Shown one piece after another: positions 5,580-25,349 of a stretch of DNA of 64,000 bases. The stretch lies in the NCBI GenBank assembly GCA_965113315.1, contig OZ220370.1. One strand, written 5' to 3'. The notes beneath the pieces are model-generated. The model saw only the letters and a program-made list of their open reading frames with translations. It was not told where the DNA came from and did no database searches. The number at the start of each line of letters is the position of its first letter. Within the stretch, counting starts at the first letter, position 1. This DNA is from Podarcis vaucheri (Eukaryota). Both the position numbers and the translations under genes were made by a program.

Positions 5580-5735
5580 ATCCGATCAGATTGTGAAGAA
5601 ACTCAGTCACTTATATACAGAATCTCTGGAGTAGGAATTGATCAGCATCCCGTTGGAGTGTTTATCATTAATCAAAAGACTGGGGAAATTAATATAACAA
5701 AAATAGTAGACCGAGAGGAGACACCAATGTTTGTT
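5580..5735 (+). CDS. DSG1: Desmoglein-1-like exon 4 (EC1), IRSDCEET...[11 protein letters not shown]
   Basis: Cadherin YRISGVG and DRE motifs; tgcag/gtaagt; 156 nt. Confidence 0.95.
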
Positions 5736-6161
5736 GTAAGTACTATGTGTTTGCAAAACTATAACGTCTTTTCCCTCTATTACTTAGAACTAGAATATCT
5801 GAAGGGCATTATCTTCCCATATTAGTCTATTTACTTACTAAGGTTACCTCAGGCTGCTAACCATGATGACTATGTTCTACTTCCACTGTCTTCTGATGGC
5901 TATGTTCTACTTCCACTGTATGCTTCTGAATGCTAGTTCCTGGAAACCACAAGGTGTGGGGGGGAGTGCTCTTGAACTTGGTCCTGCATGCAAGCTTCCC
6001 ACGAGCATCTGGCTGCCCATTGTGAGAACCGGCTTCTGGACTAGATGAGCCACTTGGCTAATCCAGCTGGGTTGTTCTTACATCCCTTAACATTGCAGAT
6101 GCATCTGGTGGGAACTACAGGGCCTTTTAAGGAGCAACCACATACCGTGTTTTTCCGTGTA

Positions 6162-7389: not shown

Positions 7390-7750
7390 TATAAGACGTC
7401 CCCATGTATAAGATGACCCCTATTTTTTTAACCCAAAATTAAGAAAATGCACTATGCACTATCCATATATAAGATGACCCCTTATTTTAAACTTCAAAAA
7501 TTTAGGAAAAAATATAGTCTTATACAAGGAAAAATATGGTAATTTCTGGGACTCCTTTGTTGTAGACTAACGGTGATGATTTCATAACATAAGTGACTAT
7601 TGGACAATTATTATGGAGGTTTTTTATTCATTCTGCTGTTGTCACTCATTTTATTTTTAGTGCTGATTTTGTTGGTTATGCTTGCTTTGTTGTTTCTCAC
7701 TGGTATTCACCTTGAAAGGCAGACTGTATTTTATAATACATTGTTGTTAA

Positions 7751-7784
<34 letters not shown>

Positions 7785-7904
7785 CCTGCAGTATTTTTAA
7801 ATTAGATTTTTTTTTATCTAACAAATGAATAGTTTTAAGTATTTTGAATACTACATACTCCTTCTGAGTTAATCTTTGATTTTTTTTATTATTTCTTAAT
7901 GCAG

Positions 7905-8052
7905 ATTAAGTGCTTTGCTATAAATGTTGTGACCGGACAATCAGTGGAAACACCACTTGACCTTCGAGTCCGGATTCTGGATGTAAATGACAATTCACCC
8001 ATATTTACACAAAGTGTGTTTTCAGGGTCAATTTCAGAGGGCAGCATGGACA
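7905..8052 (+). CDS. DSG1: Desmoglein-1-like exon 5 (EC1-EC2), IKCFAIN...DVNDNSP...SMD
   Basis: DxNDN motif; gcag/gtaagt; 148 nt, phase 0/1. Confidence 0.95.
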
Positions 8053-8638
8053 GTAAGTACATTACACATTGTAGCCATTTCTGCCACTGGATAAAATAAG
8101 TATGCATCTGTCTTTCTCATCATGTTCCATTTCAATCTGGGATTCCTCACCCACCCTCATTCGGTTGCCCTTTCCCCATTTCTATGCACTTCTACTCAAA
8201 AATAAGCCTCATTGTGTTCAATGGGGGCTGCTCTTGGGTGGGTTTAGGATTGCAGACCAAAACCCTGTGTCTGTAGAGTAGGGATCTGGGAAACTGTAGT
8301 CCCTCCAGGTGATTGCTAGACTACAACTCCCATCATTCCTCAGAATTGGCCATGCTAGCTGATGGGAACTGGAGACATGGGGGGGGCAGAAGTTCCCTGT
8401 CCCTGCTTTAGAGAAATAACCAAAATGATGCATTTTAAAGGCACATCAGAGTTTGCTACATTTGTAGGGCAGCAGATTAGCAGAGACTGGGGAACTTCAT
8501 TGAAACATACCTAACATTTTGGAAAATGCCTCTTAGTAAGATATTGGAGAATTCACAAATTATGGCATCCTTACAGTTTTAATAAACTGAAGTGCAGCTC
8601 TTAAGGTTTTGTTTGAGTGGTCCTCTCCTTCTTTCCAG

Positions 8639-8802
8639 ACACATTGGTGATGAAAATAACTGCTACAGATGCAGATGAGCCAAATAACCTGAATTCCAAA
8701 ATTGCCTTCAAGATTGTGAGTCAAAATCCTGGAGGTCCATCAAAGTTTATTTTGAACAAACAGACTGGAGAACTTCACATTGCAAATATCCTTGACAGAG
8801 AG
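8639..8802 (+). CDS. DSG1: Desmoglein-1-like exon 6 (EC2), [25 protein letters not shown]...LDRE
   Basis: ATDADE and LDRE motifs; ccag/gtaaaa; 164 nt, phase 1/0. Confidence 0.95.
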
Positions 8803-9395
8803 GTAAAAATACATTGCTTTTCCTGAGAAATACCACAGTTTGTATGCTAGGGGAAAGAGCTATTCAGGACTTAAGAAAGCTTTCTGAAAAGTCAGCACAA
8901 AATAATTGGCTATTGTGCATCTATTCAAGAAGAGAAAATCAGCCGGGGGGGGGGATCAGAAAGATAATATGGGTTGAAGTGACAGATATGCAGAAAGCTG
9001 TAACCTTGTGCATGTTTACCTGGGAGTAAATGCCATTGAACTCTGCATCAAAATTGAATGAGGTTGCGAAAAATGATGTCAATGAAATAGAGACGAACAA
9101 GACACTTAAAATGCTTCATAACTTTTCCCATTACATCACATCATAGGATCCCTCCAGACAACCAGTTTATTGAGAATTCATCCTGATTTTCTTGCACAAA
9201 CCTTACACTGAGGTTCACTTATATCCTCTGTTCTTTATTCAGGCATTATTCTTATTTGTTTGCAGGGCTGTTAAATGAAAATTCATCCTTACACTTTTCA
9301 ATTCACTTCCCCCTTCACTTTCAAGCACAATAAGTTAGATTCTTTTTTAAAGGGGGGGAGATTTGTTTACTAGCACTTCAGTCCACTTTAATTGT

Positions 9396-9756
9396 GGGAC
9401 GCGGGTGGCGCTGTGGGTAAAACCTCAGTGCCTAGGGCTTGCCAATCGCATGCTCGGCGGTTCGAATCCCTGCGGCGGGGTGAGCTCCCGTCTTTCGGTC
9501 CCAGCTCCTGCCCACCTAGCAGTTCGAAAGCACCCTTAAATGCAAGTAGATAAATAGGTACCGCTTTATAGCGGGAAGGTAAACGGTGTTTCCGTGTGCT
9601 GCGCTGGTGCAGGCTCGCCAGAGCAGCTTCATCACGCTGGCCACGTGACCCGGAAGTGTCTCCGGACAGCGCTGGCCCCCGGCCTCTTAAGTGAGATGGG
9701 CGCACAACCCTAGAGTCGGACACGACTGGCCCGTACAGGCAGGGGTACCTTTACCT
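9396..9756 (+). mobile_element. Sauria SINE
   Basis: Same head, body and ACCTTT tail. Confidence 0.9.
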
Positions 9757-9915
9757 AAAGTTCAAGTACACACCCGAATCCCTCCCACAAAATATGGTCC
9801 ATGTAAAACACTTTCCATGATGAGATTAAAGAGCACTACAGTGTAGAAGTGTGCTTTCTCACTAATGTGAATGTTTAAACGTTTGTCTTCCTTCCTTCCC
9901 CTCACTTTTATATAG

Positions 9916-10050
9916 GAACATGCAAGCTACAGTCTGGTTGTGAGAGCCACAGACAGGGATGGAGGTCCAGATGGAATATCATCTGAATGTTCCTGCGAGG
10001 TTTCTGTAACTGATGTAAATGATCAGTTTCCAACGTGTGCACAGAGCTCG
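9916..10050 (+). CDS. DSG1: Desmoglein-1-like exon 7 (EC2), EHASYSLVVRATDRDGG...DVNDQFP...SS
   Basis: Manual translation; tatag/gtaagc; 135 nt, same size as DSG2 exon 7. Confidence 0.95.
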
Positions 10051-10950
10051 GTAAGCTATTGACTAAAGCAGTATCACCAGCAACAATCAAGTCCACATTC
10101 TACAATACCTTCTAGGAGCAGGAACTAGAAGAGGGGTGTTCAGGGGTGGGTTTATATGCCTTTGGAAGTAGAAATGGAAGCAGTCCAGACTATCAGCCTA
10201 GTTTCTACTTTCCCTTCAAAAAAATAAAATGAATGGAAAATGAATCTGTATTTCACTGAAAGGAATACCCTACTAATGTCATATAACCTGCGATAATGTT
10301 AAGCTGACAACTATTGAGGCCAGGCTTCTCCAAGCTGGGGATGTTGCTGGACTACAACTCCCATCAGCCCCAATCAACATGGCTGATGGTCAGGGATGAT
10401 GGGAAATGCAAGTCCAACAACATCTTGAGGGCACCAGGTCGGGGAAGGTTGTTTTAGACCAACTCTCAGGAGTTGACCTTTCATAGCGCGTTCACACAAA
10501 ATAAAGGATTTTGCACATAAAAACATTTAGCGTTTCAACTGCATACCTAAAAGAATAGGTATACAGTATATTTCTAAATAAAACAAAGGAAAATAAAGTT
10601 TAATAGTGACTGCATGCTTGAAACCATATGATTTACGAACTGATTTGTAAATGCAGGAAATGAAATACAGAGTTACATGGAAGATTGTCTACACATACTA
10701 ACTGTTGGTGGGCAACAGTTAGTATCATATCATAAAATCATATGGCAGAGAACCAAAGAAAATAAATAACTAGGAGGGAGTTGAGGGGAGTTACTCTATA
10801 TTGAGCTGCTGAGAACAACAAAATATGCAAAACAAAAAATGGATTGGTGGGATTACCATAGCAAGCTGAGTTGTGTTTTGATTCATTGCATTTATATATT
10901 ATAGTTTATTTTTCCCAATTAAAAAAAAATAAAGTCCTCAGTGTGCTTCA

Positions 10951-11346
10951 AAAGGTAAAAAAGGTAAGGTAAAGGACTCCTGGATGGTTAAGTCCAGTCA
11001 AAGGTGACCATGGGGTGTGGCACTCATCTCGCTTTTCAGGCTGAGGGAGCCGGCGTTTGTCCACAAACAGCTTAGTGGGTCATGTGGCCAGCATGGCTAA
11101 ACCTCTTCTGGCGCAATGGGACATTATGACAGAAGCCAGAGTGCACAAACATGCCATTTACCTTCCCGCCACAGCAGTACATATTTATCTACTTGCACTG
11201 GTACACCTTCAAACTGCAAGGTTAGCAGAAGCTAGAATAGAGCAATGGAACCTTACCCCATTGCATGGATTCGAACTGCCGACCTTCTGATCAGCAAGCC
11301 CAAGAGGCTCAGTGGTTTAGACCACAGCACCACCTGTGTGTGTCCC
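10951..11346 (-). mobile_element. Sauria SINE (older, diverged)
   Basis: AAAGGT tail at left, diverged body. Confidence 0.85.
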
Positions 11347-11626
11347 ACAGCTATCAGAGAGAGCTTTGACCTTCTAAAAACACTTTTCTTCAGCTTGCTG
11401 TGGTTATCCCAGTCACCCACAGATTGTTGTGCACTATGCCATAAGTAAGCATAATACTCTTTCATTCCGTACAGCTAATTGTATCCATATGAGTGACAAA
11501 TGATACATATCAGACCATTAGTGTTCATAGCAAGTTTGAAATGAGTAGCAGCCATGTGCAAACTGCCTTTCGAGTTAGTGGGAAACCCATGCATGCATGT
11601 CAACAATTGTTTTCTTTCTTTTCTAG

Positions 11627-11812
11627 TACGCAATTACCATTGTAGAAAATACACTCAATCAAGAGGCTCTGAGAATACAAGTTTTTGATTTAGATCAAGA
11701 GTATACAGATAATTGGTTTGCAGAATTTTATTTTATCTCAGGAAATGAAAATGGCAACTTTGACATAGTCCTAGACAGAGCAACTAACGAGGGTATCCTG
11801 AGGGTTATAAAG
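11627..11812 (+). CDS. DSG1: Desmoglein-1-like exon 8 (EC3), YAITIVENT...DLDQEYTDNW...SGNE...TNEGILRVIK
   Basis: Manual translation; ttctag/gtatga; 186 nt, same size as DSG2 exon 8. Confidence 0.95.
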
Positions 11813-12796
11813 GTATGAATTTTCCTATTTTCATTGAAAGTCAAATTCTGATCCTATAACTGTTTATTGAAAGTAGAAAATATCCACTCTTTTTCATATT
11901 GTCCAAGAAACACAGAGTGAGAGATAACTGTAGTCTCTCAATAAAATAAGCTCTAGAGCAGGGGGTGAGGAAACTGGGGCCTTCCTGATGTTGCTGGACT
12001 ACAATTCCCATCATACCTGCCCATCCAACTGATGGGACATGTCCAACAACACATGCAGAGCCACAGGTTCCCCATCTCCAAACTTCAGCTTTGCTTCCCA
12101 ATTGACTTGCTTTATATAGTGCCTTAATTCATCTCCGTGTTGTGCACACATCAAGTGTGCATGTTTGCAAAGGGGTATCTACACAATCAGCAGTCCTGCA
12201 TGGGACATGGCTACATTACTTATCTGCAGACTTTCACACTCAGTGTATGGATGTAGAAGGTCAGTGATATGCATGATTCTGGGGGTGATATCAGCGGTGC
12301 TCCCCAGATTTTCATGCTGCTCTTTTGCAGGTATGACAAAGAGCCAGGGCTAGAAATGCAGTTTTGCCACATGTGTCAGGTTCTTAATCAACCACACAGG
12401 ACTGTGGACTGACAGTGGCTTTTCATGTTTCCTGCATTTTTTGTGTCATCTGTCAACATCTGTGCTCTGTCTGAAGCACATCTGGGGAAACTTCCTGATT
12501 CATATGTAATCTATGGAATTTATTAAACAGATTTTAAAAAAACAGAATGATCATAAGATCGTTTGACTGCTTTATTTGGATTTGACTTGTATGTGCTGGC
12601 TCTCCTTTTCGCTGCATTCAGCTTTTCTGGAAGAGTCTTGTTATGCAAGCAGCAAATGATTTTAATACAAGATACTTTCCAGCGAATGGCTTTCTAACAA
12701 TAAAAATGCTATGTGTATGATAAATGGATGTGCATAATACCTTGTGTAAAGGACCAGAGAACAGCATGCATTACACCGTTTCTTTCTTTGTTTTAG

Positions 12797-13080
12797 GAAA
12801 TTAACTATGAAGAATTTTCAAGCATACCACTGAGTATTGGTGTGCGAAACATAGCTCCTTTCCATTCTTCAGTGGCTTCACAATATCAATATTCAGCGGC
12901 TTCTCAGGGTACCCCAATTACAGTACAAATAACCAATGTAATGGAAGGACCAGCATTTTATCCAACTTCAATAAAAGTGTCTGCACCTGAAAGCTTAACA
13001 ACTAAAACTATACTTACCTATGACGTTGGAACATTCCAAGCTATCGACCAGGATACTGGGAAAATTGCCACTAACGTCCG
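12797..13080 (+). CDS. DSG1: Desmoglein-1-like exon 9 (EC3-EC4), EINYEE...NVMEGP...DQDTGKIATNV
   Basis: Desmoglein NVxEGP linker; ttttag/gtaaaa; 284 nt, phase 0/2. Confidence 0.95.
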
Positions 13081-14156
13081 GTAAAATAGGCTTTGTTTTC
13101 AGGATTCTTCTTTGTAGCTCACCCCAAGAATTCAGACTTATCAGAGTGTGTGTGTGTGTGTGTATTTTCAGTATAAGCAGGACTCCATCTTTGCACCCAC
13201 ACATAGACATGCATACACACAGAGAGAGAAAGCAAAAGCTCTTGTTTCCAAAAAGGATGGAGGGTGGGGGTCTGCTCTCGCCACCACTTTTAATTGTTTT
13301 CCGAGATATGGAGAGAAGGAAAAGGGGAAACCGGGATATTCTGGGATCAAATCAGAAACCAGGATGGCTTCTGTGATTCTGGGACTGTCCCTGCAAAATT
13401 GGGACATTGGAGGGTCTGCATTTAGTATACAATAGGTGACCTTCAAAGTTGATCTTTCTCTGCTCTTTAAACTGCATTTGTCAAAAATGAATTGTGGCTA
13501 TTATATGGTTGATTTTTAAAGGAATGCATTTACAGTTCTGAATTTCAAATGTCAACGTTTTGAGGATACAGAGACTTCTAAGTGACTGTGGTATAAATAA
13601 ATCCACTAATGGTACTCATCTATATTCTTGGTGGGGAAAACCTTGAGGCCTCTGGTGCTAATAATGCACATTATTAATCCTAAAATAGCAAATCACAGAG
13701 CAATAAAAATAGTGTTATCTTAGTATGAATACCAATGCAAGGCAGATGTTCTATTATGGCCCTTCCCAGACATGAGGAGTTCCTGGTGACGTGGAAATTG
13801 GAGACTCATTATTCTTACCTACAGTGATTGTGCCTGCCTGCTATATAGCAGAAGTAGGAACTGCACAATCAGAGGTCTTCTAGGTTGAGTCCAACCCCTG
13901 CTCTGAACCCTGCAGGACACAGTTACAGCACCCATTACAGATGGCTGCTGAAGTACCTTCAGCAAAGTCTTGTCACCTCTGCTCATTCTGCATAATATGT
14001 GGAACCAAAACTCTAAGATACAACAAAAAGGTTTGCTCTCACATAACAGTATTTTCTCCTATTAAACTGAGCAAATAAAATCAGTCAGTTTGTGCAAATG
14101 TAAGCACTGTTACATCTTAAAATGAAGCCCAATTCATTTCTGCTAATCAAAAACAG

Positions 14157-14299
14157 CTACGTCATGGGACGTGATCCAGCCGCCTGGTTTCGAGTCAACC
14201 CAACAACTGGCGTCATCTCTTTCAACAAAGTGATTGATCGGGAATCAATCTATGTAGTCAATGGGGTATACTCTGCAGAGCTGCTAGCTATTACTAGAG
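14157..14299 (+). CDS. DSG1: Desmoglein-1-like exon 10 (EC4), YVMGRDPAAWF...IDRES...LAITR
   Basis: aaacag/gtaaga; 143 nt, phase 2/1, same size as DSG2 exon 10. Confidence 0.93.
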
Positions 14300-14759
14300 G
14301 TAAGAAAAGAGCTGGTTTTTTAAATATAATTTTCCTTGCTATTTACAGGAAGTCTGCAACAGCTTGAAGAAATGCAATTCTGCAAACTGAGATAGTTTTT
14401 CCAACTATCTCGTAGTCCATTTTGAGCTAGTGAAGAAAGTAGCCTTTGTGGGTTTCAAATAGCTAAATATACAAATATTCCCCCTTCAACAACTGCACCC
14501 AAATGTTGGTGTGGGTAGTTTCAAATCCACACATGAAACTGATTCCCCATAAATCACCTCTGAAGACTCCACACTTCTTGAGCTCCTCTTTGTGTAAACT
14601 CTCTTCTGTCTCAGCTTCTTCAGCTTCCAACAGTAGAAATTGAAAGCGCAAAATAAATGCATGCTGCTCAGTCATGCAACAGAATGTTTACAATGATACC
14701 CATATTTTCAAATGAATGGAGACACAAACTGCCGCTGAGGGACTTTTGAGGCTTTAGAG

Positions 14760-14895
14760 CAGGCATAGGGAAACTTGGCCCTCCAGATGTTTTGAGACTA
14801 CAATTCCCATCAACCCTGACCACTGGTCCTGTTAGCTAGAGATGGTGGGAGTTGTAGTCCCAAAACATCTGGAGGGCCAAGTTTGCCTATGCCTG
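14760..14895. mobile_element. Palindromic hAT-type MITE
   Basis: CAGGCATAGG...CCTATGCCTG, 8-bp TSD ctttagag/ctttaaag; degenerate relatives near 8280, 10320, 11960, 17050, 17340, 53250. Confidence 0.8.
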
Positions 14896-15049
14896 CTTTA
14901 AAGAGATACAGGGCTCTACAAGATTTCTCCTACTGGCAGTTCAGTGCTGCTGTTCAGTGGTGTTGATCGTGATATCCAAGGATATCACGTTTAAACTATC
15001 CAAATTATAAGAGGCATGTAAACTACCATATGTGAACTAGTACTGATCA

Positions 15050-16130
15050 TATAAGAAGCAGGGGCTGGATCAGACCAAAGACCCATCCATTCCAGCATGT
15101 TGTTCTCACAGTGGCTAACTAGATGCCTACTGGAATCCTGGAAGCACTCTCCTCATTTGTGGTTCTCAGCAAATGTTATTCAGAAGTATATTGCCCCTGA
15201 CCCTGTTTAAAGAATTGAGGCTGGTGACTATTGATATATTTTGTGGAATCAAATTCTGTAATTGTGCTGTGTGAAGGATTACTTCCTTTTGTTACTGAAT
15301 CTTCCATCATTCAGCTTCATTGGATGAGCTCAGGTCCTAGAATCCTAAGAGGCTCTAGAATGCTAAGAAAGAAAATGTCTCTCTATCCATTGCCTTCAAA
15401 CCATGCATAATTTTATATACCTCCACCATGTCCTCTGCCCTTAACTTGCCATTTTTTAAAACTAAAAAGACCCAAATGTTGCAACCCTTCCACATTAAAG
15501 AGTAGTTCCAGCTCCAGTAGTTGCAACCCTTCCACATCAGAGAGTAGTTCCAGATCATTTTGGGTGCCCTTTTCTTCACCTCTTCCAGCTTCAAAATATG
15601 ATTTTCAAGAGAAAGTGACCAGTGTACAACACTTCAAGTGCAGTCCCACTGTGCAGCTGTATAGCAGTTTTATTTTCAGTTCCTTTGCTTATAATCCCAC
15701 ACATTGAATTCACCCTTTTCACAATTGCCACACACTACGTTGGCATTTTCATTATCGGTCTCATTCCCGATCAGTCCCTGCCAGTTCAAACCCTTTTAGC
15801 ACAAATGTCACTTAAGCAATTTTTGCCCTCAGTGTGCAGAACTTTGCCCTTACTTACATTGAATTGCATTTATCATTTTAATGCACATTTGCTCAGCTTA
15901 GAGAGCTCCTTTTGAGGCTCCTTGCAATCCATCTTTTTAATTTTATCATCCTAAACAATTTGGTGCCATCAATAAACCTGGCTACCTCATTGCTCAACCC
16001 TAACCCTAACTCCAAGTTCAAGTTTTTTAAAATCACTGTTCCCAATCCCTTGGGAGATACAGTTTATTATATCCCTCCATTGTGGGAGCTGCCTGTTTAT
16101 TCCCACTCTCTTGCTAACCCATTTGTGACA
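15050..16130 (-). mobile_element. CR1 LINE 3' fragment
   Basis: Minus frame LEEVKKRAPKMI...DMVEVYKIMHG matches CR1 ORF2 C-terminus. Confidence 0.85.
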
Positions 16131-16634
16131 CAAAAATGTAGTTTTTTCTGAATCTGGAAATGTTCCTGCTTTCACAGATACACCATTACTGGGACTGCCT
16201 ACATTTATTTTCACCAGTTTTCAAATGGACAAACTGCAGGGTAATGCAGAATCAATCTGCAATGAGATTTTAGTTTCAAAATGAAACCAGTTTCTCAAGA
16301 AGCACTTTTGAGGACCAAAAAGTATCCCATAAAACTAGATTGTGTGTGGACAATGTACTAAGTCTCCACTGATTCTAGATAAAATGCTGTCTGCAGACAG
16401 CCTTCCTTCCCCCCCCCCCCCCCGCTTTTTATCCCATTATCAGCCATTGAGTATTTAACAGCTGTTTAACTTCAAACAATAAAATCAACCACTTGTTTAC
16501 TTTTCTGATTTGTACAAATGTAGTTTTGCCATGCTGTTTGCTTACCAGGAGTATTTTTCTTCTGCAACATAGACTAGTAAGATGCACCTGATTCCACCCA
16601 CCCACCATCTTCATATAGATGTCTTTTATTACAG

Positions 16635-16856
16635 ACAGTCCTTTCACAACAGCTACTGGTACCATTGTGCTTACTATTGATGATGTCAATGACAACTGCC
16701 CTACTGTAACAGACGAAATCAGAAGAGTATGTGTGGACAATCCAACAGCGGTAATCACAGCTCACGATCTAGATGGCCATCCATATGGTCCACCTTTTAA
16801 ATTTACAATAGTGGCACAGTCTCCAGGAAGTTCGTGGAACATCAGAATAGTGAATG
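16635..16856 (+). CDS. DSG1: Desmoglein-1-like exon 11 (EC4-EC5), DSPFTTATGT...DDVNDNCP...DLDGHPYGPPF
   Basis: Intact DxNDNCP and DxD motifs; acag/gtgagt; 222 nt, phase 1/1. Confidence 0.93.
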
Positions 16857-18157
16857 GTGAGTACATTTATATGTAGAGATCACCTTGCCAGTCAATGCTT
16901 GCCTGACTTTCTAAGCTGGTTTACCTTCCAACACCTCCCTCCTATCCCTGCACCAACCATTTCTTTGTATGGTAAGTTTGTAAGAATCGGTGTGCTTTCT
17001 GGTCACTCTCAACTTGGGCATGTGGGAATCCTACACAACAGTTTGAGCAGGCATCTCCAGATGTTTTGGACTACAATTCCCATCATCCCTGACCACTGGT
17101 CCTGTTACCTAGGGATCATGGGAGTTGTAGGCCAAAACATCTGGAGGGTCGCAGGTTGGGGATGCCTGAGTTTGAGCATCTGGGCCACAGGAAGGGAGAA
17201 ACATCTATTGAGTTTGTAGCAAACAAAGACATTCAGACAAAGGCATGGTGCAACTGTGTAATGTTATGTAATTCAGCTTCAATATAATGCAAATGTCTTG
17301 CAGTATCTGTAATCAATTAAAGCATCCCTGAGAGTGAGCCTTCTTCAACCTCATGTCCTCGAGGTTCTGGGACTGCATTTCCCATCATCCCCTACTGTTG
17401 GCCACGCTGGCTGAGACTCTGGAAGTTGTAGTCCAAAACATCTAGAGGGCAGGTGTGTGAAGGCTGGGGAAGGCTGCTCAAAGCATTTGCTAGAGGAATG
17501 TTCTCCAAGCATGACCATCAAATAACCCTCTCCTGCTCTCTGGCTTCTCTGTGATCAACATGAATGTAGCTGTTGGGTACCTGCCCCCATTCACTTTTAT
17601 CAGTTGATGGTCAATTCTTACAAGACATTGCTAATTAACTTCATCAGCCCAGGGAATGGGAGGGTAAGCAAAGAGAGAAGTCAGTGGCATAGCTGCACTG
17701 TGCTGCAGGAAAGAAACTCAAATGTGCTTTCTGAATGCACCCAGATGGGTTCTGAGATTTGTATCCTACATCGCACAAGATTAGGCTCCCATCAGCACAT
17801 GCATTTCTGCTTGCTCATCAGGACTTCCCCCTTCTTCTTACCCCCACATGCTCCCTGTGCCCTCCCCAGCTTTGCTCCTGAGGGTTGACAGAACTCCTAG
17901 AACAGATTTAGTGAACATCCATGGGAAGGAGAGGGTGAGGAAATCCCATTGTGCAAGAGGAAATCCTAACACCAACAGCACACTCACTCAGCACTATGTT
18001 GGAGGTGACCCTGAGAGATTAATGTAGTCTAGGCTACCCTCATAAGGACTGCTAACTTTATTTAGGAACATGAACTTGACCCTGAGCAGAGATTCCAAAG
18101 CAGAATTCTTAATCTAAATTATTATTTTTGTTTCTTCCCTCTCCCCGTCCCAAACAG

Positions 18158-18862
18158 ATACCTCAGCAGCACTGTTCTCCCAGGATATAGAATTTGTCAT
18201 TCATGAGGTCCAAGTTAGAGTGTTCGACAACAGTGGCAGAAGCTGTGATAGGCCACTGGTTATTCCTTTGCAAGCCTGTCATTGTGACCGCAATGGGAAC
18301 TGTGTCAAGTCTGCCACTCGAAGAATCACTGTTACTATTATTGGTGGTGGTGCTGGTGGAGGTGGTGGTGCTGGTGGTGCTGGTGCTGGTGGAGGAGGAG
18401 CAGGAGGAGGAGCAGGAGGAGGAGGAATGGCAGGAGGTGGAACAGGCGTTATTGGTGGAGGTGGCCAGGGAGGAGTCATTGGGGGAGGAACTAGTGGAGG
18501 AGGAACCAGCGGAGGAGGAACTGGCTGGGGAGGAAGCACAGGGGGAGGAGCAGGGGGAGGAGCAGCTGGCGGAGGAGGAACTGGTGGAGGAGGAACTGGG
18601 GGAGAAGGAACTGGAGGAGGAACCGGTGAGGGAGCAGGCACCTGGGGAGGAACAGGAGGAGGAAGAGATGACGGAACAGGAGGAACTGGTGGTGGCACTG
18701 GTGGTGTTATTGATTATGGTGATGGTGGCGCAGGTGGCTATGGTGGTTATGGTGGCTATGGTGGTTATGATGGTTATGGTTGGGGCAGACAAGGAGGCGC
18801 AGAAACTACACTTAGTGCTACAGCCATTGGCCTGATGTTCCTCGGAGGACTAATATTTGTGT
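18158..18862 (+). CDS. DSG1: Desmoglein-1-like exon 12 (EC5 C-half, 152-aa Gly-rich stalk, start of TM helix)
   Basis: Pyrimidine tract + aacag acceptor, gtaagt donor; 705 nt open frame, phase 1/1; begins with EC5 DNSGRSC...ACHCD..C and ends with TM AIGLMFLGGLIFV. Confidence 0.93.
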
Positions 18863-19194
18863 GTAAGTATTCTACTGAAACTAAATTAACTATTTCTGTT
18901 TTGTTTGTTTGTTCTTTGGAATTCTGTGTGTTTTTTAAAAGGGAACTAGACCGCTGATCTTTCTTATTTAGAATTTTGCTATAACATTATTGCATTAATG
19001 AAAGCTGCTCTGTGCACCTTCCCATGAAATGAGGATTTTTGACAAGAGGAGAGTTGAAGATTTTGGAGTCCCATTAACTATATGTTTATGTTCACACACT
19101 TTAAAATCACAACCTAGCCTTGAAGGAAGTATCAAGTGCTGCACTTAACACAGAAATGTGTGCTACCATAGCTTAATGCACAAGGCTAAGCAGA

Positions 19195-19541
19195 GGGACG
19201 CGGGTGGCACTGTGGGTTAAACCACAGAGCCTAGGGCTTGCCTATCAGAAGGTTGGCGGTTCGAATCCCTGCGTCGGGGTGAGCTCCCGTTGCTTGGACC
19301 CTGCTCCTGCCAAGCTAGCAGTTTGAAAGCATGAAGTGCAAGTAGATAAATAAGTACCGCTCCAGTGGGAAGGTAAACAGCGTTTCCGTGTGCTGCTCTG
19401 GTTTGCCAGAAGCGGCTTAGTCATGTTGGCCACATAACCCGGAAGCTGTATGCCGGCTCCCTCGGCCAATAAAGCGAGATGAGTGCCACAACCCCAGAGT
19501 CGTCCGCAACTGGACCTAATGGTCAGGGGTCCCTTTACCTT
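19195..19541 (+). mobile_element. Sauria SINE
   Basis: Full length, TSD taagcagag. Confidence 0.92.
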
Positions 19542-19636
19542 TAAGCAGAGTCAATGGCCAAATAGCTGTCTTACTTGTTTCCAAAAAGCCTTAAGATGCC
19601 TCATCAACAGATAGTTCTGGGTGCAGCAATGAAAAT

Positions 19637-19845
19637 ATAGGAAGTAGCCTTGTGCTGATTCAGACCAGTGCTCCATCTAGCTTGGTATTGTCTCTACACT
19701 GACTGACAGTAGCATTTCTGGGGTTTTAGGCAGCAGTTTTCCCCAGCCCTGCCTGGAGATTGATTGGGGATTGGGAATCTTGGGGATTGAACCTGGGACC
19801 TTCTGCATGCAAAGTAGAGGCTTGACCACTCAGCTATGGCTCTTC
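19637..19845 (-). mobile_element. tRNA-derived SINE (Squam3-like)
   Basis: Reverse complement of ATAGCTGAGTGG...GGTCCCAGGTTCAATCCC head; same family at 38067-38222 and 57518-57700 (+). Confidence 0.7.
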
Positions 19846-20560
19846 CCAACTGCACCTGCAAAGCAGATCCAGAGATGCACCAGTTGCCATAGGAGTGCTG
19901 CTCATGTAGCTGCCAGGGCAGCTGCTGTATCAGCAATGGGAATGGTGTTAAACTGGATCCCAGCACCAGTGGGCTGACTGGTCTGCTTGAATCAGAGTTA
20001 TATCCTGGCACCTAATGCTGTCTCAGCCATGCCTGTTCGTGTAAAGAAGGATAAATAGAAATAATGTGTTGTTCGTAATGCTCACCATTGAAACATAAAA
20101 GTGGTTAAACAAATAGATTAAGAAATATAGATGATAAGAGAAAATAATTTAGAACAGTAAGAAAACACAATTAAAAGGACAGTAAATAGGAAACCATGGA
20201 AAGAGTGGAAGGGAAGTAAAAGTAAAGATATATAGTAATTTGGATGAATATAGATAAGTTATTATTACTGTAATTCGTGTTTTATATATATGCTGTTATC
20301 TTTCTTATTATTTTGTGCATGACTGTAACATAGTATGTGTTGTCGACAAGAAATAATAGAAAAGTAAATAAGAAAAAAGGAAGAAAGAAACATAAAAGTG
20401 GTTAGAAATCAAAGGATTCTTGGTTCTGTCTAATTTAAAATTCCTCTTGGGTCTCAGAACTTTTCATTCCTTGCAAATTAAGTTGCGTATTTATATTTGG
20501 AGACAAATATATGCCATAATGCTTAAAAACGGCATCAATTTCTTTTACCTCATCTATTAG

Positions 20561-20712
20561 TGGTTCCAATTCTGATGTCACAGAGTGACTGTTGTGGCTA
20601 TTGTGGATCTGGTCCTACTGGTGGCGTTGGGGCTGGATTTGAGCCTGTGCCTGAATGTTCAGAAGGAGCTATTCATTCATGGGGAATTGAAGGAGCACAG
20701 CCGGAAGACCGG
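20561..20712 (+). CDS. DSG1: Desmoglein-1-like exon 13 (TM end, intracellular anchor), LVPILMSQSDCCGYC...FEPVPECSEGAIHSWGIEGAQPEDR
   Basis: FEPVPECS(D/E)GAIHSW is DSG1-like; attag/gttggt; 152 nt, phase 1/0. Confidence 0.92.
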
Positions 20713-21119
20713 GTTGGTTCATAACTTTGCAGAAAGCTTTACAGGATCTATCCCATTATCAATATGAAGCCTCTAACACAATGATGGACCTGTCAGACTT
20801 CCTAGCACAACCATTATTGTCTGTCCCATCTATTCCATTTCAACATTTGTATTCCACTCTTCAGTGTTTTCACTCCGAGCCGACTCCCAAGTAATATAAA
20901 AGCAACCAAAATAAGCATAGCAAAACAACATATTACTTGGTTGACTATTTTCCTCCATATTGATCTGCCCAACTGCTAGGATCAGCTGAGGCAAGTCTCC
21001 CAGGCAGAAGCAGCTCACCAGGTGGGGTGGAACTGCTGTGCTAGCTTCCTGACAGGTGGGCCACTGATGTTTACTGGGAGGGAGGAGCAAGGCAGCAGGG
21101 AGGTTGGTGCAGTATCACC

Positions 21120-21910
21120 ATCATCATCACCATCATTAAAATTTCTATACCATCCTTCATCTGAAGATCACAGGGTGGTTTACAATATAAAAACACAAAA
21201 TACATACCATAATAACAAGCAAAAATAATTCTCCCCCCATCCATCCCCAGTTTAAAAGGCCATAGATTTTTTAATTAGCCAAATGTCTCAGAGGAGTGTT
21301 TTTATCTAGCACCTAGACATATGTAACCAAAGCCCAGGTGACCTTCCCTGGAGAAAGCATTCCACTAAGAGGGAATGACCACAGAAAAAGCCCGTTCTCA
21401 TGTTGCAGCCCTCCAGACCTCTCACAGAGGAGGCACACTAAGAAGGGCCTCAGATGGTGATCACAGGGTCCAGCTCACTTCATATAGGGAGAGGCAGTTT
21501 TTGAGGTAGCGTGGTCCTGAGCTTTTTAAGGCTTTATAAGTCAAAAGCAGCACTTTGAATTGGGCCCAGAAACTAATTGGCAGCTGGTGCAGTTGAGCCA
21601 GGATTGGCATTATATTCTCAAGCCGTCTTGCCCCAGTGAGCAACCTGGCCTCCGAATTCTGCACCAGCTGATGTTTCCAAACTGTCTTCAGAGGCATCCC
21701 TATGTATAACATGCTGCAGTAATCTAAGCTGGAGGTTAAGAGAGCATAGACAACTAAAGTTAGGCTATCCTTGTCTAGGCAGGGGTGCAGCTGAAGCAGA
21801 TGGAAGGTACTCTGTGCCACCAAGGCCACCTGAGCCACAAGTGACAGCGGCAGATCCAGAAGTACTCCAAAGTTGCATACCCACTCCTTCAGAAGAAGTG
21901 TAATCCCATC
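21120..21910 (-). mobile_element. L2 LINE 3' fragment
   Basis: ORF 21461-22003 contains TSSLDYC...QLVQNSEARLLTG...FKVLLLTYKAL, typical L2 ORF2 C-terminus. Confidence 0.88.
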
Positions 21911-22226
21911 ACTTACCTGACCTCCTGGTAGGTGGGTTGCTGCTGCGGAGGGGGAGGGGCCAGGCAGCAGTGTCAGCCTTATGCAAATTGGCTCCCCCTC
22001 CACTGCCTTGTCCCACCTTCACTCCCTGTGAACAGCAGCAGCTCTGCGGCCGGGAGGTTAGGTAAATGCTCCCACTCCAACCCAACATCTGCTTCTAATG
22101 CCTGTCTAGTTTCCCATTATGCTTGTGGTCCTCTGAATCAAGCCAAAAACCTTGTATTTACATCTCTTTTAAAAAATCAATATTTAAACTAGCTTTTTAA
22201 AATTTATTTTTACTCACTTCTTTTAG

Positions 22227-22290
22227 GATGTTTCAAATATTTGTGGGCAAGTGGCAAATACAGGCATGGGCGACTATGGTGACTCCTCAG
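22227..22290 (+). CDS. DSG1: Desmoglein-1-like exon 14, DVSNICGQVANTGMGDYGDSS
   Basis: Strong ttttag and cag|gtaagg sites; 64 nt, phase 0/1, required to keep frame between exons 13 and 15. Confidence 0.85.
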
Positions 22291-22451
22291 GTAAGGCTAA
22301 ACAGACATTGTAAGTTTGGTAAATAATACTTTTCATATATATTCCTTCCAGTGGATATATGGAAGGATAATACAAAAGGCTTGGAGACACAGGGCAGCTT
22401 CAGAAGCATAACCCAGCTCCACAGCCTGTGTTCACCTACTATAGTTTAGAT

Positions 22452-22528
22452 CAGGGTTTCCCAGACTTGGGTCTCCAGCTGTTTTTGTAGCCCGAAAACA
22501 GCTGGAGACCCAAGTTTGGGAAACCTTG
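22452..22528. mobile_element. 77-bp hairpin hAT MITE
   Basis: Near-perfect inverted repeat, exact 8-bp TSD gtttagat. Confidence 0.85.
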
Positions 22529-22712
22529 GTTTAGATCTTGTTAGCACCTCCAACGTTAACTGAAGTCCATACCATTGAAATCCAGAGATCAACAGATGTT
22601 CCTTTGTGCATATGGCATTCATCCATACAGATAAGCTGCTCGCCGTGTGGCTTTCACAGAAGAAGAAGTAGAAGAAGAAGAGAGGAGGGGGAGGGGGGAG
22701 GAAACACCTATA

Positions 22713-22948
22713 CAGTGGTACCTTGGTTTACGAACTTAATCCGTTCTGGAAGTCCATTCTTAAACCAAAACCATTCTTAAACTGAGGTGCGCTTTCCCTA
22801 ATGAGGCCTCCCACCGCCAGTGCCCTTCTACCGCTTCCATTCGTAGACCAGGGTAAAGTTCGCTAACCAAAACACCTACTTCCGGTTTGCGGAGTTCATA
22901 TACCAAAGAGTTCATTAACTGGGCTGTTCGTAAACCGAGGTACCACTG
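22713..22948. mobile_element. Tigger/pogo-like MITE
   Basis: TA-CAGTGGTACCTTGGTTTACGAAC...GTTCGTAAACCGAGGTACCACTG-TA. Confidence 0.88.
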
Positions 22949-23171
22949 TATATGAGCACTAGTAGCAGTTGGCCTATTAGGATGCACTGCTCCAACAACT
23001 TCAATGTGCCCTCAACCAGCCCCACTCTGCCGGCTTTCTTGATGGTGGCACTGGCTGTCAGCTTCCTCCTCTTCAGTCTCAAGACTGCCCTTGTAGAACT
23101 CAGAAACAAAGAGGATGGGTGCAAAATTAGAATTAGCTGGCTCAGTCTGTCATTACCTCTAGCACTACCTA

Positions 23172-23332
23172 CCGTATTTTTCCATGTATAAGACTAGGTT
23201 TTTTTTCCTTAAAAATAATGTCAAAAATTAGGGGGCATCTTATACACGGATACATCTTTCCTCTTAAATCTGAGTCCCCCAAAATAGGGGGCATCTTATA
23301 CATGGGGGTGTCTTATAGATGGAAAAATACGG
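23172..23332. mobile_element. CCGTA-type Tc1/mariner MITE
   Basis: TA-CCGTATTTTTCCATGTATAAGAC...GTCTTATAGATGGAAAAATACGG-TA. Confidence 0.85.
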
Positions 23333-23526
23333 TACCTTTTGCCTAACCAGACCCAAGGGACACCAGACACTACTGCTTGCCCATATTAATGGGGTTTAAA
23401 GTGGCTTGAATTCATCTCCGCATTGGCTACTAGGCCAGGATGTTTGGGGGCTACATAAATTACCACTGTTCCTCCGAAAGCATCATGCAAAACTAATATG
23501 GGGTTGTTGTTGTTTCTAATTTTCAG

Positions 23527-23738
23527 ATATCTATGCAACTAAGTATAAAGGTGGAGTGAGTACAGGAGTTGAAGAGACAATCGGACTCGGAGCAGTTAAA
23601 GGCTATGGAACGAATGTTGATTACGGAACTACTACAGGCTATGGAACAACAGGAAGAAAAGAAGCATATGGAGGGACCATAAAAGAATACAGAGAGAGTG
23701 GTGTGAATATGGCTTTCTTGGACAGCTATTTTTCGGAG
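23527..23738 (+). CDS. DSG1: Desmoglein-1-like exon 15, DIYATKY...EYRESGVNMAFLDSYFSE
   Basis: NMxFLxSYF motif; tttcag/gtaacc; 212 nt, phase 1/0. Confidence 0.93.
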
Positions 23739-24308
23739 GTAACCCACGTTCATCTCTTTCAACGCAGGCAGTTTACTAAATGTGCCAGTTTGGGACAAGT
23801 CCTTACCATGGTTGTATGCAACTGTCCTTGCCAGTATATGTAGGGCAAATTTCAGTCCCAGGTAAACAGGACTATATTCAGGGTCAGAGAAGTCCAAACT
23901 GCTTTTATCCAAGTTGCTGAATGCAGTTGCTTTAGCAAATTGGAGGGGTGGTAGGGAAAGGTGGTGACTTTAGGATGCTTTGCACCAAGTGTATTTCTGT
24001 GTGCAGAGAAGTTATACTTGCTGGTTGTATCTGACCACATCTGCCCCTGCCACATCATTTCCTAGGCACATCAATTTCTCCTTCTGCCCTCAACATAAAC
24101 TCTGCATGCCTGACCTTTGGCTAACAGCAGAAGGAATTTATCTGAACAAATCTAATCACTCCAATTGCACATTTTTTAACCACTGATATTCTGTCTGGTG
24201 CTCAATAGCAGTGCATTGCATCTCTTACTAATAGATTTGTTTTCTTCTTCATGTTGATCACAAGAAAGCAAGGACTTCAATTCTGTCTTCCCCTTTCTTC
24301 ATTTTTAG

Positions 24309-25349
24309 AAAGCGTTTGCCTATGCTGACGAAGACGAAGGCAGACCTGCAAATGACTGTCTCCTGATATATGATCATGAGGGGATAGGCTCTCCTGTTGG
24401 TTCCATTGGCTGTTGCAGTTTTATTGGCGATGATCTGGATGACACCTATCTAGATACACTGGGACCTAAGTTTAAGACCTTGGCAGAAATCTGCCTGGGT
24501 GTGCAAATTGAGCCATTCCCAGATACTGACTCAAATTGGCCATCTTTGCCCAATCCTGATCTCGATATAAGCCTGCCACCGCCTGGAACTACCATCGTTG
24601 TTAATACATCTTCAACTATGACTCCACCTCCTCCTGTTGGCAGCACGACGGTTGTTACTGAAAATACCTACACAACTACTTCTGCTGTACAGCCTCCAAG
24701 GCCTGATCCTATGCTCCAAGGCAATGTAGTGGTGACTGAGACGTATACAACGGGGCCAACAATGAAACCTCCTACAATGAATGTCGATCCTCTGTGTGGA
24801 TCAAATGTTGTGGTAACAGAAAGGGTGCTTGCTCCTGGCGCGGTCACTGATTTGCATGGCATGATAGATATTCCAGAGCTACCAGATGGGTCCAATGTGG
24901 TGGTCACAGAAAGGGTGATTGCTCCAAATGCAAGGATGCCCCCTTCCATGAGTATTCCTGACCTGTCTGAGGGGTCAAATGTAGTGGTGACGGAAAGAGT
25001 GATTCGACCTGTTGGAGGCATGCAGGGCAATTTGAGCATTCCTTCTGAGTTATCAGGTGGACGCAATGTGGTTGTTACTGAAAGAGTAGTGTCAGGGGCA
25101 GGAATGAGTGGAGGCATTGGTGGCATGAGTAGCATCCCTTCTGAGTTATCAGGTGGACGCAATGTGGTTGTTACTGAAAGAGTAGTGTCAGGGGCAGGAA
25201 TGAGTGGCGGCGTTGGCAGCATGAGTGGCATCACAGGTCAAATGCTGAGTCCCGATAATCTCTTTAGCCAAACAATAGGATCCGCTTCTCCTGGTACGAG
25301 TCGAAAGCGAGTGACAAAATACAGCACTATTCAGTATTCAAATCAATAA
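24309..25349 (+). CDS. DSG1: Desmoglein-1-like terminal exon 16 (ICS, proline linker, repeat unit domain, terminal domain; stop TAA)
   Basis: [22 protein letters not shown]...LGPKFKTLA; six NVVVTE repeats; C-terminus [24 protein letters not shown] closely matches the mammalian DSG1 tail as recalled. Confidence 0.96.

What the first reader, a model, noticed from the sequence alone, without database searches (positions are those of the whole stretch)
18343..18798. Desmoglein with a 152-residue extracellular glycine-loop stalk between EC5 and the membrane
Seen: exon 12 is 705 nt, versus 228 nt for the homologous DSG2 exon in this window. The excess is an in-frame segment with 96 Gly in 152 aa (63%). 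It is built of GGGA/GGGT units punctuated by V/I/M/W and ends in (GGY)4-DGYGWG just before the TM helix. Splice sites, phase, EC5 cysteines and TM are intact. Known: desmogleins such as DSG2/3/4 join EC5 to the TM by a short linker. Gly runs anchored by aliphatic/aromatic residues define the glycine loops of loricrin, K1/K10 end domains and corneodesmosin, and GGY repeats occur in sauropsid corneous beta-protein tails. Inference: this could be a squamate epidermal desmoglein with a built-in flexible or cohesive spacer (contour length about 55 nm at 0.36 nm/residue). It might do in cis what secreted corneodesmosin does in mammalian corneodesmosomes, or act as a protease-sensitive release point for skin shedding. 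I do not recall such a domain being described.
Basis: partly seen in the sequence, partly recalled or inferred. Interest (0 to 1): 0.85.

Follow-up and report, generated by a model that had tools for sequence, protein, structure and literature searches.

The report
Glycine-rich stalk in reptile/bird epidermal desmoglein
A lizard skin-type desmoglein (a cell-cell adhesion protein) carries a transcribed, about 150-residue glycine-rich floppy segment between its last extracellular domain and the membrane; the segment also occurs at variable length in other squamates, birds and a crocodile, is annotated in databases, and I found no paper describing it.

Summary
Exon 18158-18862 (+) is 705 nt with AG/GT borders. 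It encodes the end of EC5 with four invariant cysteines, then 152 residues with 96 Gly (18343-18798), then the start of the TM helix. The equivalent DSG2 exon in this window is 228 nt.

RNA from a very close relative or conspecific splices this exon at both borders. One 896-nt cDNA contig runs through the whole tract into the next exon. No splice joint inside the tract was listed, so it is not an intron or an assembly artefact.

The tract is not squamate-specific. In this desmoglein, the segment from the last EC5 CxC to the TM measures:
- 16 other squamates: 97-172 aa
- 40 birds: 74-132 aa
- Crocodylus: 119 aa
- turtles: 51-62 aa, not Gly-rich

Mammalian DSG1 has a cysteine-free, hypervariable low-complexity spacer instead of EC5, and it is Gly-rich in wallaby and platypus. 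Near-identical bird sequences differ by in-frame 4- and 8-residue indels. AlphaFold2 gives no fold (pLDDT about 40) and Pfam has no match.

Best reading: a disordered, slippage-driven flexible juxtamembrane stalk. RefSeq models contain the tract, yet seven full-text searches found no description. This scan has not noted it before on other DNA.

The parts
3925..25346 (+). Mapped coding part of the DSG1/3/4-type desmoglein gene. Exons by tblastn with Zootoca desmoglein-1-alpha P0186: 3925-4113, 5571-5756, 7905-8063, 8638-8802, 9916-10050, 11627-11812, 12779-13081, 14158-14343, 16619-16855, 18158-18862, 20561-20713, 22227-22289, 23523-23738, 24309-25346. The first exon is not mapped.
   Evidence: 66-100% identity per exon; Pfam Cadherin and cadherin cytoplasmic motif on exon translations; tree.
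16619..16855 (+). Preceding exon: end of EC4 and first half of EC5 (…TGTIVLTIDDVNDNCP…).
   Evidence: RNA joint 16855>18157/8, GT..AG: 193 raw reads in X23 and contigs in three other runs.
18158..18342 (+). Second half of EC5 with the four conserved cysteines and the last strand RITVTII.
   Evidence: Aligns to residues 507-551 at the end of EC5 in solved human DSG3/DSG2 ectodomains. Invariant cysteines. AF2 strands at exon residues 38-42 and 48-53.
18343..18798 (+). Glycine-rich tract, 152 aa with 96 Gly. Degenerate tandem sub-arrays lie at 18342-18445 (9/12/15-nt units), 18480-18621 (15/30/45/60-nt units) and 18716-18788 (9/18/27-nt GGY units).
   Evidence: AF2 pLDDT 38-48 with no secondary structure. 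No Pfam match. Covered by RNA reads and by a collinear cDNA contig.
18799..18862 (+). AETT plus the first part of the transmembrane helix (LSATAIGLMFLGGLIFV); GT donor at 18863.
   Evidence: AF2 helix at residues 220-231. Nearly invariant in 45 sequences.
20561..20713 (+). Next exon: rest of the TM helix and the cytoplasmic anchor (VPILMSQSDCCG…).
   Evidence: RNA joint 18862>20561, GT..AG: 165 raw reads and contigs in three runs. Translation.
60096..60323 (+). Equivalent EC5-TM exon of the neighbouring DSG2 gene, 228 nt, with a linker of about 12 residues. It serves as an internal comparator.

Best explanation
The tract is a genuine, transcribed coding part of the lizard's DSG1/3/4-type (epidermal-type) desmoglein. 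It forms an intrinsically disordered, very flexible glycine-rich stalk between the last cadherin domain (EC5) and the membrane. It arises and changes length through replication slippage or unequal exchange of GGN-rich repeat units, in a juxtamembrane linker that tolerates almost any in-frame low-complexity sequence. The same position carries a Gly run plus an acidic/Tyr/Thr-rich tail in squamates, birds and a crocodile, and only the non-Gly tail in turtles. Mammalian DSG1 has a comparable hypervariable spacer. Its most likely role (inferred, not shown) is mechanical: a slack tether or entropic spring that decouples the adhesive EC1-EC5 rod from its anchor. It would add roughly 5-10 nm when relaxed, by polymer scaling for about 150 residues, and up to about 55 nm only if fully stretched. 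Exact length and sequence would be under weak constraint.
For: Shown:
- The exon is open and in frame from EC5 to the TM.
- Both exon borders are used in stranded raw RNA reads (193 and 165 reads), and introns have about zero depth.
- An 896-nt cDNA contig is collinear through the whole exon and spliced to the next one.
- No joint inside the tract is listed.
- Named orthologues carry a tract at the same place: after the strand following the last EC5 cysteine, and before ...TTLS-AIGLMFLGGLIFV.
- The repeat unit differs by lineage: GGGGGGM in Elgaria, GGGGA in snakes and Pogona, GGGAA in geckos, GGGT/GGGA here.
- In-frame indels separate close sequences: +15/-6 nt between the window and the RNA contig, and 4- and 8-residue gaps between otherwise near-identical bird ORFs.
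- TRF finds several degenerate sub-arrays.
- Gly codons are mixed (GGA 51, GGT 30, GGC 11, GGG 4), so this is not a young pure microsatellite.
- AF2 with a 45-row alignment gives pLDDT 38-48 and no secondary structure across residues 62-210.
- No Pfam family matches.
- The Gly run is dispensable: turtles have none, and some birds have a run of only 2-7 glycines after the last EC5 strand.
- Mammalian DSG1 has a cysteine-free 42-97 aa G/S/T/N/D spacer at the same place.
Against: - No protein-level evidence covers the tract itself.
- The RNA comes from 'organism A', whose introns differ from the window by about 2-3%, so it may not be the same species.
- Read depth drops inside the tract (6-73 against 120-230). 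I attribute this to the tool skipping 18328-18433 and to allele divergence, but a minor internally spliced isoform cannot be excluded.
- Persistence of a long Gly run in every sampled squamate, with Gly kept despite synonymous codon diversity, hints at selection on composition. A purely neutral spacer model does not predict that.
- Aromatic and aliphatic 'anchor' residues could mediate weak self-association, which disorder predictions would not reveal.
Confidence: 0.7

Rival explanations
1. Cohesive glycine-loop domain. Gly loops anchored by V/I/M/W/Y self-associate between neighbouring or opposing desmogleins. They would do in cis what secreted corneodesmosin does in mammalian corneodesmosomes, and so strengthen corneocyte cohesion in sauropsid skin.
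For: The composition resembles glycine-loop sequences: 63% Gly with 16 of 152 residues V/I/M/W/Y and a (GGY)4 block. Elgaria has a regular GGGGGGM repeat and Pogona has GGGGL. Corneodesmosin is listed among mammal-specific genes (PMC5554394), so sauropsids may lack a separate factor. A Pogona DSG1-type desmoglein, presumably the orthologue, is present in cornified claws and skin (PMC11704414).
Against: Anchors are not conserved. Snakes and geckos use mostly Ala/Thr, and the first 27 residues here have none. Ser, co-dominant in corneodesmosin, loricrin and keratin loops, is rare (3 of 152). Turtles and several birds lack the run. No binding test was done. Monotremes and marsupials have Gly-rich DSG1 spacers as well.
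Confidence: 0.15
2. Programmed release point. The stalk is the site where extracellular proteases sever the desmoglein during desquamation or ecdysis.
For: An exposed, disordered juxtamembrane segment is accessible. The membrane-proximal part holds R, Y and W residues that trypsin- and chymotrypsin-like proteases could use. Squamates, which shed in sheets, have the longest tracts.
Against: Most of the tract is Gly/Ala/Thr, a poor substrate for such proteases. Birds and a crocodile, which do not shed in sheets, also have the tract, while turtles lack it. No cleavage data exist.
Confidence: 0.07
3. Not part of the mature protein. The tract would be mostly removed as an exon-internal intron, or it would be an assembly expansion.
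For: RNA depth is lower inside the tract than in its flanks. Two of three contig sets break at 18327. Some automatic gene models of other species skip parts of this exon.
Against: No internal joint is listed, while joints with as few as 4 reads are. One cDNA contig is collinear through all 705 nt apart from +15/-6 nt in-frame differences. Dozens of RefSeq models and independent genomic ORFs keep the tract in frame.
Confidence: 0.03
4. A folded glycine-based structure, for example a polyglycine-II helix bundle or a beta-solenoid, forming a rigid pillar of defined height.
For: Very high Gly content and short repeats. The (GGY)4 block has a 3-residue period.
Against: AF2 finds no structure (pLDDT about 40). 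Repeat periods are irregular, with 4-7 residue units and 9-60 nt DNA periods. Length and unit vary freely among species and alleles.
Confidence: 0.03

Closest known systems
Mammalian desmoglein-1 membrane-proximal region (called 'EC5' or extracellular anchor in the literature)
   Same: Same gene group: the amniote DSG1/3/4 clade has 99% support. Same position directly before the conserved TM (…GPAGIGLL… / …AIGLMFLGG…). It is hypervariable, low-complexity and free of cysteines. It is Gly-rich in wallaby (34 of 89) and platypus (25 of 86).
   Different: Mammalian DSG1 has no EC5 cysteine fold at all, so the spacer follows EC4. The sauropsid protein keeps a complete EC5 and adds the tract after it. 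Eutherian spacers are S/T/N/D-rich rather than Gly-rich and shorter, at 42-97 aa. One-to-one orthology is unresolved: mammal DSG1, gorilla DSG3 and the sauropsid clade form a trichotomy, and no mammalian DSG4 was in the set.
Zebrafish desmoglein alpha glycine-rich insert (Goonesinghe et al. 2012, PMC3268089)
   Same: A Gly-rich insert of unknown function inside a desmoglein ectodomain, confirmed by ESTs. A lungfish DSG2-like protein, P0050, has a similar insert at about residues 398-450.
   Different: It is 40-43 aa, lies within EC3 of a DSG2-type gene rather than between EC5 and the TM, and is described as unique to zebrafish.
Glycine-loop domains of corneodesmosin, loricrin and keratin 1/10 end domains (from established knowledge; corneodesmosin context)
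   Same: Gly-dominated quasi-repeats punctuated by aromatic or aliphatic residues. Corneodesmosin acts extracellularly on corneodesmosomes.
   Different: There is no sequence homology. Here the partners of Gly are A/T rather than S. The anchors are irregular and not conserved between lineages. The tract is covalently part of the cadherin rather than a secreted or intracellular protein. Adhesive behaviour is untested.
Other desmogleins with an intact EC5 and a short linker: DSG2 in this window, human DSG2/DSG3 structures 5ERD/5EQX, amphibian DSG4-like
   Same: Same EC5 cysteine pattern and the same exon design, with EC5 end, linker and TM start in one exon.
   Different: The linker is about 12-30 residues and the exon is 228 nt in DSG2 here, against 175 residues and 705 nt.

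Membership tests
Desmoglein (desmosomal cadherin) | Tandem extracellular cadherin repeats | tested here: met
   Pfam Cadherin PF00028 hits on exon translations. The EC4 exon matches human DSG3 at 1e-19 and DSG2 at 6e-9. Four Cadherin stretches in the orthologue P0186.
Desmoglein (desmosomal cadherin) | Membrane-proximal EC5 with four conserved cysteines, then a single TM helix | tested here: met
   C29, C40, C42 and C48 are invariant in 45 sequences. The segment aligns to the end of EC5 in 5ERD/5EQX. TM helix in the AF2 model.
Desmoglein (desmosomal cadherin) | Cadherin-type cytoplasmic segment and desmoglein repeat units in the last exon | tested here: met
   PF01049 on the last exon. 96% identity to residues 883-1228 of Zootoca desmoglein-1-alpha. 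Top hits of the last exon are desmogleins.
DSG1 orthology group, as opposed to DSG3 or DSG4 | Groups with mammalian DSG1 to the exclusion of DSG3 and DSG4 in a tree | tested here: inconclusive
   The sauropsid clade, mammal DSG1 and gorilla DSG3 form an unresolved trichotomy inside a 99%-supported amniote clade. No mammalian DSG4 was available. RefSeq names alternate between desmoglein-1-like and desmoglein-4-like.
DSG1 orthology group, as opposed to DSG3 or DSG4 | Gene order in the cluster (mammals: DSG1-DSG4-DSG3-DSG2) | tested here: inconclusive
   The gene lies directly upstream of DSG2 on the same strand, which is the DSG3 position in mammals. The window does not show what lies further upstream.
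Glycine-loop proteins (loricrin, K1/K10 tails, corneodesmosin) | Gly-rich quasi-repeats | tested here: met
   96 of 152 residues are Gly, with degenerate tandem units.
Glycine-loop proteins (loricrin, K1/K10 tails, corneodesmosin) | Regularly interspersed aromatic or long aliphatic anchor residues, conserved as a pattern | tested here: inconclusive
   16 of 152 residues are V/I/M/W/Y but are unevenly spaced here. The pattern is regular Met in Elgaria and Leu in Pogona, but mostly Ala/Thr in snakes and geckos.
Glycine-loop proteins (loricrin, K1/K10 tails, corneodesmosin) | Serine as the main partner of glycine | tested here: not met
   S is 3 of 152, while T is 14 and A is 12.
Glycine-loop proteins (loricrin, K1/K10 tails, corneodesmosin) | Demonstrated self-association or adhesion through the loops | not testable with these tools
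A complex prediction was not run, because such tools are unreliable on disordered low-complexity sequence.

The most novel reading that the evidence does not exclude
The stalk could be a functional, sauropsid-wide adhesive or mechanical module of corneodesmosomes. Its Gly loops and the conserved acidic/Tyr-rich tail would self-associate, doing in cis the job of corneodesmosin, which is reported as mammal-specific. Its evolvable length would tune intercellular spacing and the compliance or release of hard, beta-protein-filled epidermis. The low-complexity spacer of mammalian DSG1 would be the remnant of the same ancestral amniote module after loss of EC5.
Probability: 0.13. Interest if true: 0.8.

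Novelty: new variant of a known kind. Interest (0 to 1): 0.55.

Why it matters
Reviews and structural models treat every desmoglein as five cadherin domains sitting directly on the membrane. Here the main epidermal-type desmoglein of lizards, snakes, birds and a crocodile carries a spacer of about 75-175 residues that is largely glycine. Mammalian DSG1 carries a different low-complexity spacer with no EC5 fold.

If the stalk changes the reach, compliance or cohesion of the junction, it bears on how rigid sauropsid epidermis (scales, claws, feathers) stays coherent and is shed. It also bears on how desmosome geometry, with an intermembrane spacing of about 32 nm, is set.

The natural series of lengths gives ready-made variants for force-spectroscopy and cryo-tomography tests. 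It runs from no Gly-rich stretch in turtles and some birds to about 150 Gly-rich residues in this lizard, with allelic indels as well.

If the tract is only a tolerated slippage product, it is still a clear example of a long low-complexity insert surviving in frame in an essential adhesion protein. It is also a practical warning, because several automatic gene models break or mis-frame at this exon.

Tried and rejected
- Spliced-out or exitron reading: rejected as the main form. Both exon borders are used, one cDNA contig is collinear through the tract, and no internal joint is listed.
- Assembly artefact: rejected, from the same contig and from orthologues in over 60 species.
- Squamate-specific innovation: rejected.
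- Known protein family for the tract: none in Pfam.
- Defined fold: none in AF2.
- Firm DSG1 orthology: could not be established.
- A sequence search with the exon alone returned only five unnamed ORF clusters from Logan assemblies. Cluster look-up gave no organism for them. Their sequences match the bird pattern seen in named proteins.
- The tuatara protein model P0275 is mis-framed at this exon and gives no answer on the ancestral state.
- The joined (spliced) protein of the window gene was not built or searched. Exons were searched separately by reference, and database orthologues served as full-length proxies.
- No complex prediction was run, because a result on disordered glycine repeats would not have changed my odds.
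- Seven full-text searches found no paper on this tract. An eighth attempt failed on a format error.

Full report
**1. What is in the sequence**

Window 18000-19100 shows a polypyrimidine tract and cag|AT at 18157/18158. It shows GTGT|gtaagt at 18862/18863. This gives an exon of 705 nt.

Only the frame starting at 18160 is meaningful. It reads the end of a cadherin domain with four cysteines (…RSCDRPLVIPLQACHCDRNGNCVKSATRRITVTII). A glycine-dominated stretch follows, and then AETTLSATAIGLMFLGGLIFV.

The 456 nt at 18343-18798 encode 152 residues, 96 of them Gly. The stretch ends in (GGY)4-DGYGWGRQGG.

Tandem Repeats Finder resolves it into several degenerate sub-arrays of 9-60 nt units with 67-100% matches. 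Gly codon use is mixed: GGA 51, GGT 30, GGC 11, GGG 4. So it is an old, diverged repeat rather than a pure microsatellite.

An open frame through such G-rich DNA proves nothing by itself, because another plus frame and a minus frame are open too. The case for coding rests on the frame link to both flanks, on conservation and on RNA.

**2. The gene**

Stop-to-stop frames and tblastn with Zootoca vivipara desmoglein-1-alpha (P0186) map 14 coding exons of one desmoglein between 3925 and 25346 on the plus strand, at 66-100% identity. The window therefore comes from a lacertid lizard, but not from Zootoca itself.

A second desmoglein, DSG2, follows from about 37.6 kb. Its equivalent EC5-TM exon is 60096-60323, 228 nt, with a linker of about 12 residues.

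- Pfam finds Cadherin and the cadherin cytoplasmic motif on exon translations.
- The EC4 exon matches human DSG3 far better than DSG2.
- The pre-glycine segment aligns with the end of EC5 in the solved DSG2/DSG3 ectodomains.
- The four cysteines are invariant in a 45-row alignment.
- The frame continues into the next exon as VPILMSQSDCCG….

I did not build or search a joined protein of the window gene. Database orthologues served as full-length proxies.

**3. Is the tract in the mature RNA?**

Sequencing runs holding window:18158-25400 were found. Four of them were laid on window:16500-20800.

- In the stranded raw RNA-seq run X23, introns have about zero depth.
- Joint 16855>18157/8 has 193 reads and joint 18862>20561 has 165 reads, both GT..AG. 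The same two joints stand in contigs of three further runs from three studies.
- Contig record 4 of run X1 (896 nt, depth about 1800) lies on 18157-18327 and 18434-18862, then jumps to 20561-20713.
- The 106 record letters between its first two pieces equal the 106 window letters that the tool skipped as repeat. The cDNA is therefore collinear through the entire exon and spliced to the next one.
- That contig differs from the window by a 15-nt insertion after 18565 and a 6-nt deletion at 18770, both in frame.
- No joint inside the tract is listed, although joints with only 4 reads are.

Depth inside the tract is lower, 6-73 against 120-230. The dip coincides with the skipped repeat and with a cluster of allele differences that would push 151-nt reads under the 92% threshold.

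Caveat: the RNA is from 'organism A', whose intron sequence differs from the window by about 2-3%. It is a very close relative or a divergent conspecific. A minor internal isoform cannot be excluded.

**4. Distribution**

- The exon translation alone found five clusters of 188-228 aa genomic ORFs with the same layout and shorter tracts.
- The last exon, searched against cluster representatives, retrieved Gekko japonicus desmoglein-1-like (P0030, 1224 aa). It has a tract of about 150 residues at the same place.
- Searching with P0030 gave 120 named sauropsid proteins.

I measured the segment from the last EC5 CxC to the TM:

| Group | Length (aa) | Median | Gly fraction (median) |
|---|---|---|---|
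| 16 squamates | 97-172 | 139 | 0.54 |
| 40 birds | 74-132 | 102 | 0.34 |
| Crocodylus porosus | 119 | – | 0.41 |
| 5 turtles | 51-62 | 60 | 0.13 |

- In birds a Gly run is followed by an acidic/Tyr/Thr-rich half.
- No turtle has a Gly-rich window.
- The present lizard has the longest segment of the sample, at 175 aa.
- The run always starts right after the strand that follows the last cysteine (…GAT-K/R-I-I/V-I-I-GGGG…). The segment always ends in …YGR…TTLS-AIGLMFLGG.
- The repeat unit differs by lineage (GGGGGGM, GGGGA, GGGGL, GGGAA, GGGT).
- Near-identical bird ORFs differ only by 4- or 8-residue gaps inside the run.

This pattern points to continuing slippage and turnover in a fixed, tolerant location.

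Amphibian DSG4-like proteins and DSG2 have short linkers.

**5. Relationship to mammalian genes**

In a 40-sequence tree the sauropsid proteins form one clade with 100% support, and it follows the species tree. That clade sits in a 99%-supported amniote clade, in an unresolved trichotomy with mammalian DSG1 and gorilla DSG3. No mammalian DSG4 was available. The gene is best called a DSG1/3/4-type desmoglein, and RefSeq names alternate between '-1-like' and '-4-like'.

On that tree, one gain plus a loss in turtles and two separate gains each cost two changes. The identical start point of the run in birds and squamates favours a single seeded origin, but this is inference.

In 17 mammals the stretch from the end of EC4 to the TM is 42-97 residues. 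It has no cysteine and a hypervariable G/S/T/N/D composition. It is strongly Gly-rich in wallaby (34 of 89) and platypus (25 of 86). So mammalian DSG1 has a low-complexity spacer in place of EC5, while the sauropsid protein has EC5 plus a spacer. Whether the two spacers are homologous is open.

**6. Structure and likely mechanism**

- AlphaFold2 on the exon, with a 45-row alignment, gives pLDDT 38-48 and no secondary structure for residues 62-210. It gives short strands in the EC5 part and a helix for the TM.
- Pfam has nothing on the tract, either in the window or in the orthologues.
- By topology the tract is extracellular and juxtamembrane.

The best-supported reading is a disordered flexible stalk. 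Polymer scaling for about 150 residues gives an end-to-end distance of roughly 5-10 nm relaxed. This is an inference. For scale, desmosomal membranes are about 32 nm apart, and current models keep EC5 at the membrane (PMC7959525).

Such a tether would add slack and entropic-spring compliance between the adhesive rod and the plaque.

Turtles have no Gly-rich stretch. Some birds keep only a run of 2-7 glycines after the last EC5 strand. A long run is therefore not required for basic function. Its presence in every sampled squamate, and the retention of Gly across synonymous codons, leave room for selection on composition.

**7.

The corneodesmosin-in-cis idea is coherent:
- Corneodesmosin is listed as a mammal-specific gene (PMC5554394).
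- It modifies desmosomes extracellularly (PMC10801484).
- A Pogona DSG1-type desmoglein was detected by mass spectrometry in both claws and back skin (PMC11704414). I presume it is the orthologue, but the identity with the Pogona protein in my set was not checked.

Against it, the anchor residues are not conserved across lineages, and serine is rare. The run is dispensable in some lineages, and nothing was tested. I give the idea about 0.15.

A protease release point is less likely, at about 0.07. Most of the tract is a poor substrate. The phylogenetic distribution also does not follow sheet-like shedding.

**8. Novelty**

RefSeq models of dozens of species already contain the tract, so the sequence feature is not new to databases. 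Seven full-text searches found no paper that describes or discusses it.

The nearest published item is the 40-43 aa Gly-rich insert in EC3 of zebrafish desmoglein alpha, 'of unknown functional significance' (PMC3268089). Reviews state that desmogleins have five EC domains followed by the TM.

I class it as a new variant of a known kind: a desmoglein with an undescribed, lineage-wide, hypervariable glycine stalk. Interest is moderate. The feature is real, expressed, widespread and gives clean experiments. Its function may still prove to be no more than a tolerated spacer.

**9. Limits**

- Protein database searches were exhausted, so the partner desmocollin, mammalian DSG4 and the lacertid's own annotated protein were not examined.
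- Tissue labels of the RNA runs are coded and unknown.
- No DNA run was laid.

Noticed in passing
P0033, P0327-P0445 (mammalian DSG1 proteins; no window coordinates): In all 17 mammalian DSG1 sequences checked, the stretch between the end of EC4 and the TM is 42-97 aa of hypervariable G/S/T/N/D low complexity with no cysteine. There is therefore no EC5 fold, although reviews describe five EC domains for all desmogleins.
   Followed up: partly
P0050 residues about 398-450 (Protopterus annectens desmoglein-2-like): A glycine-rich insert of about 50-60 residues sits inside the EC3/EC4 region of a lungfish DSG2-like protein. It recalls the published zebrafish Dsg-alpha insert and suggests repeated Gly-run insertions in desmoglein ectodomains.
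   Followed up: no
P0275 residues about 530-590 (Sphenodon punctatus Ensembl model); also P0200, P0249, P0252 and many 'partial' bird models: Automatic gene models often mis-frame, skip or truncate this exon. The tuatara model reads …HGWGWGRVRVCH…, which looks like G-rich sequence read in the wrong frame. The tract is under-represented in some annotation sets.
   Followed up: partly
window 16932-17219 and 19092-19667: Intronic interspersed repeats attract very high RNA depth and many chimeric joints or loose ends in all four runs. Reads from other copies of the repeat family pile up here, so these are not features of this gene.
   Followed up: no
window 23523-23738 and the C-terminal part of 24309-25346: The cytoplasmic tail also holds Gly/Tyr/Thr-rich low-complexity stretches (…GYGTNVDYGTTTGYGTTGRK…). 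The protein therefore carries glycine-rich sequence on both sides of the membrane.
   Followed up: no
window 37000-38000: A GC-rich island (GC 0.60) lies about 12 kb downstream of the first gene's stop. It probably marks the promoter and first exon of DSG2, whose remaining exons start at about 50.5 kb.
   Followed up: no
If real, it hints at a lost tandem duplicate between this gene and DSG2. I did not examine it.
   Followed up: no
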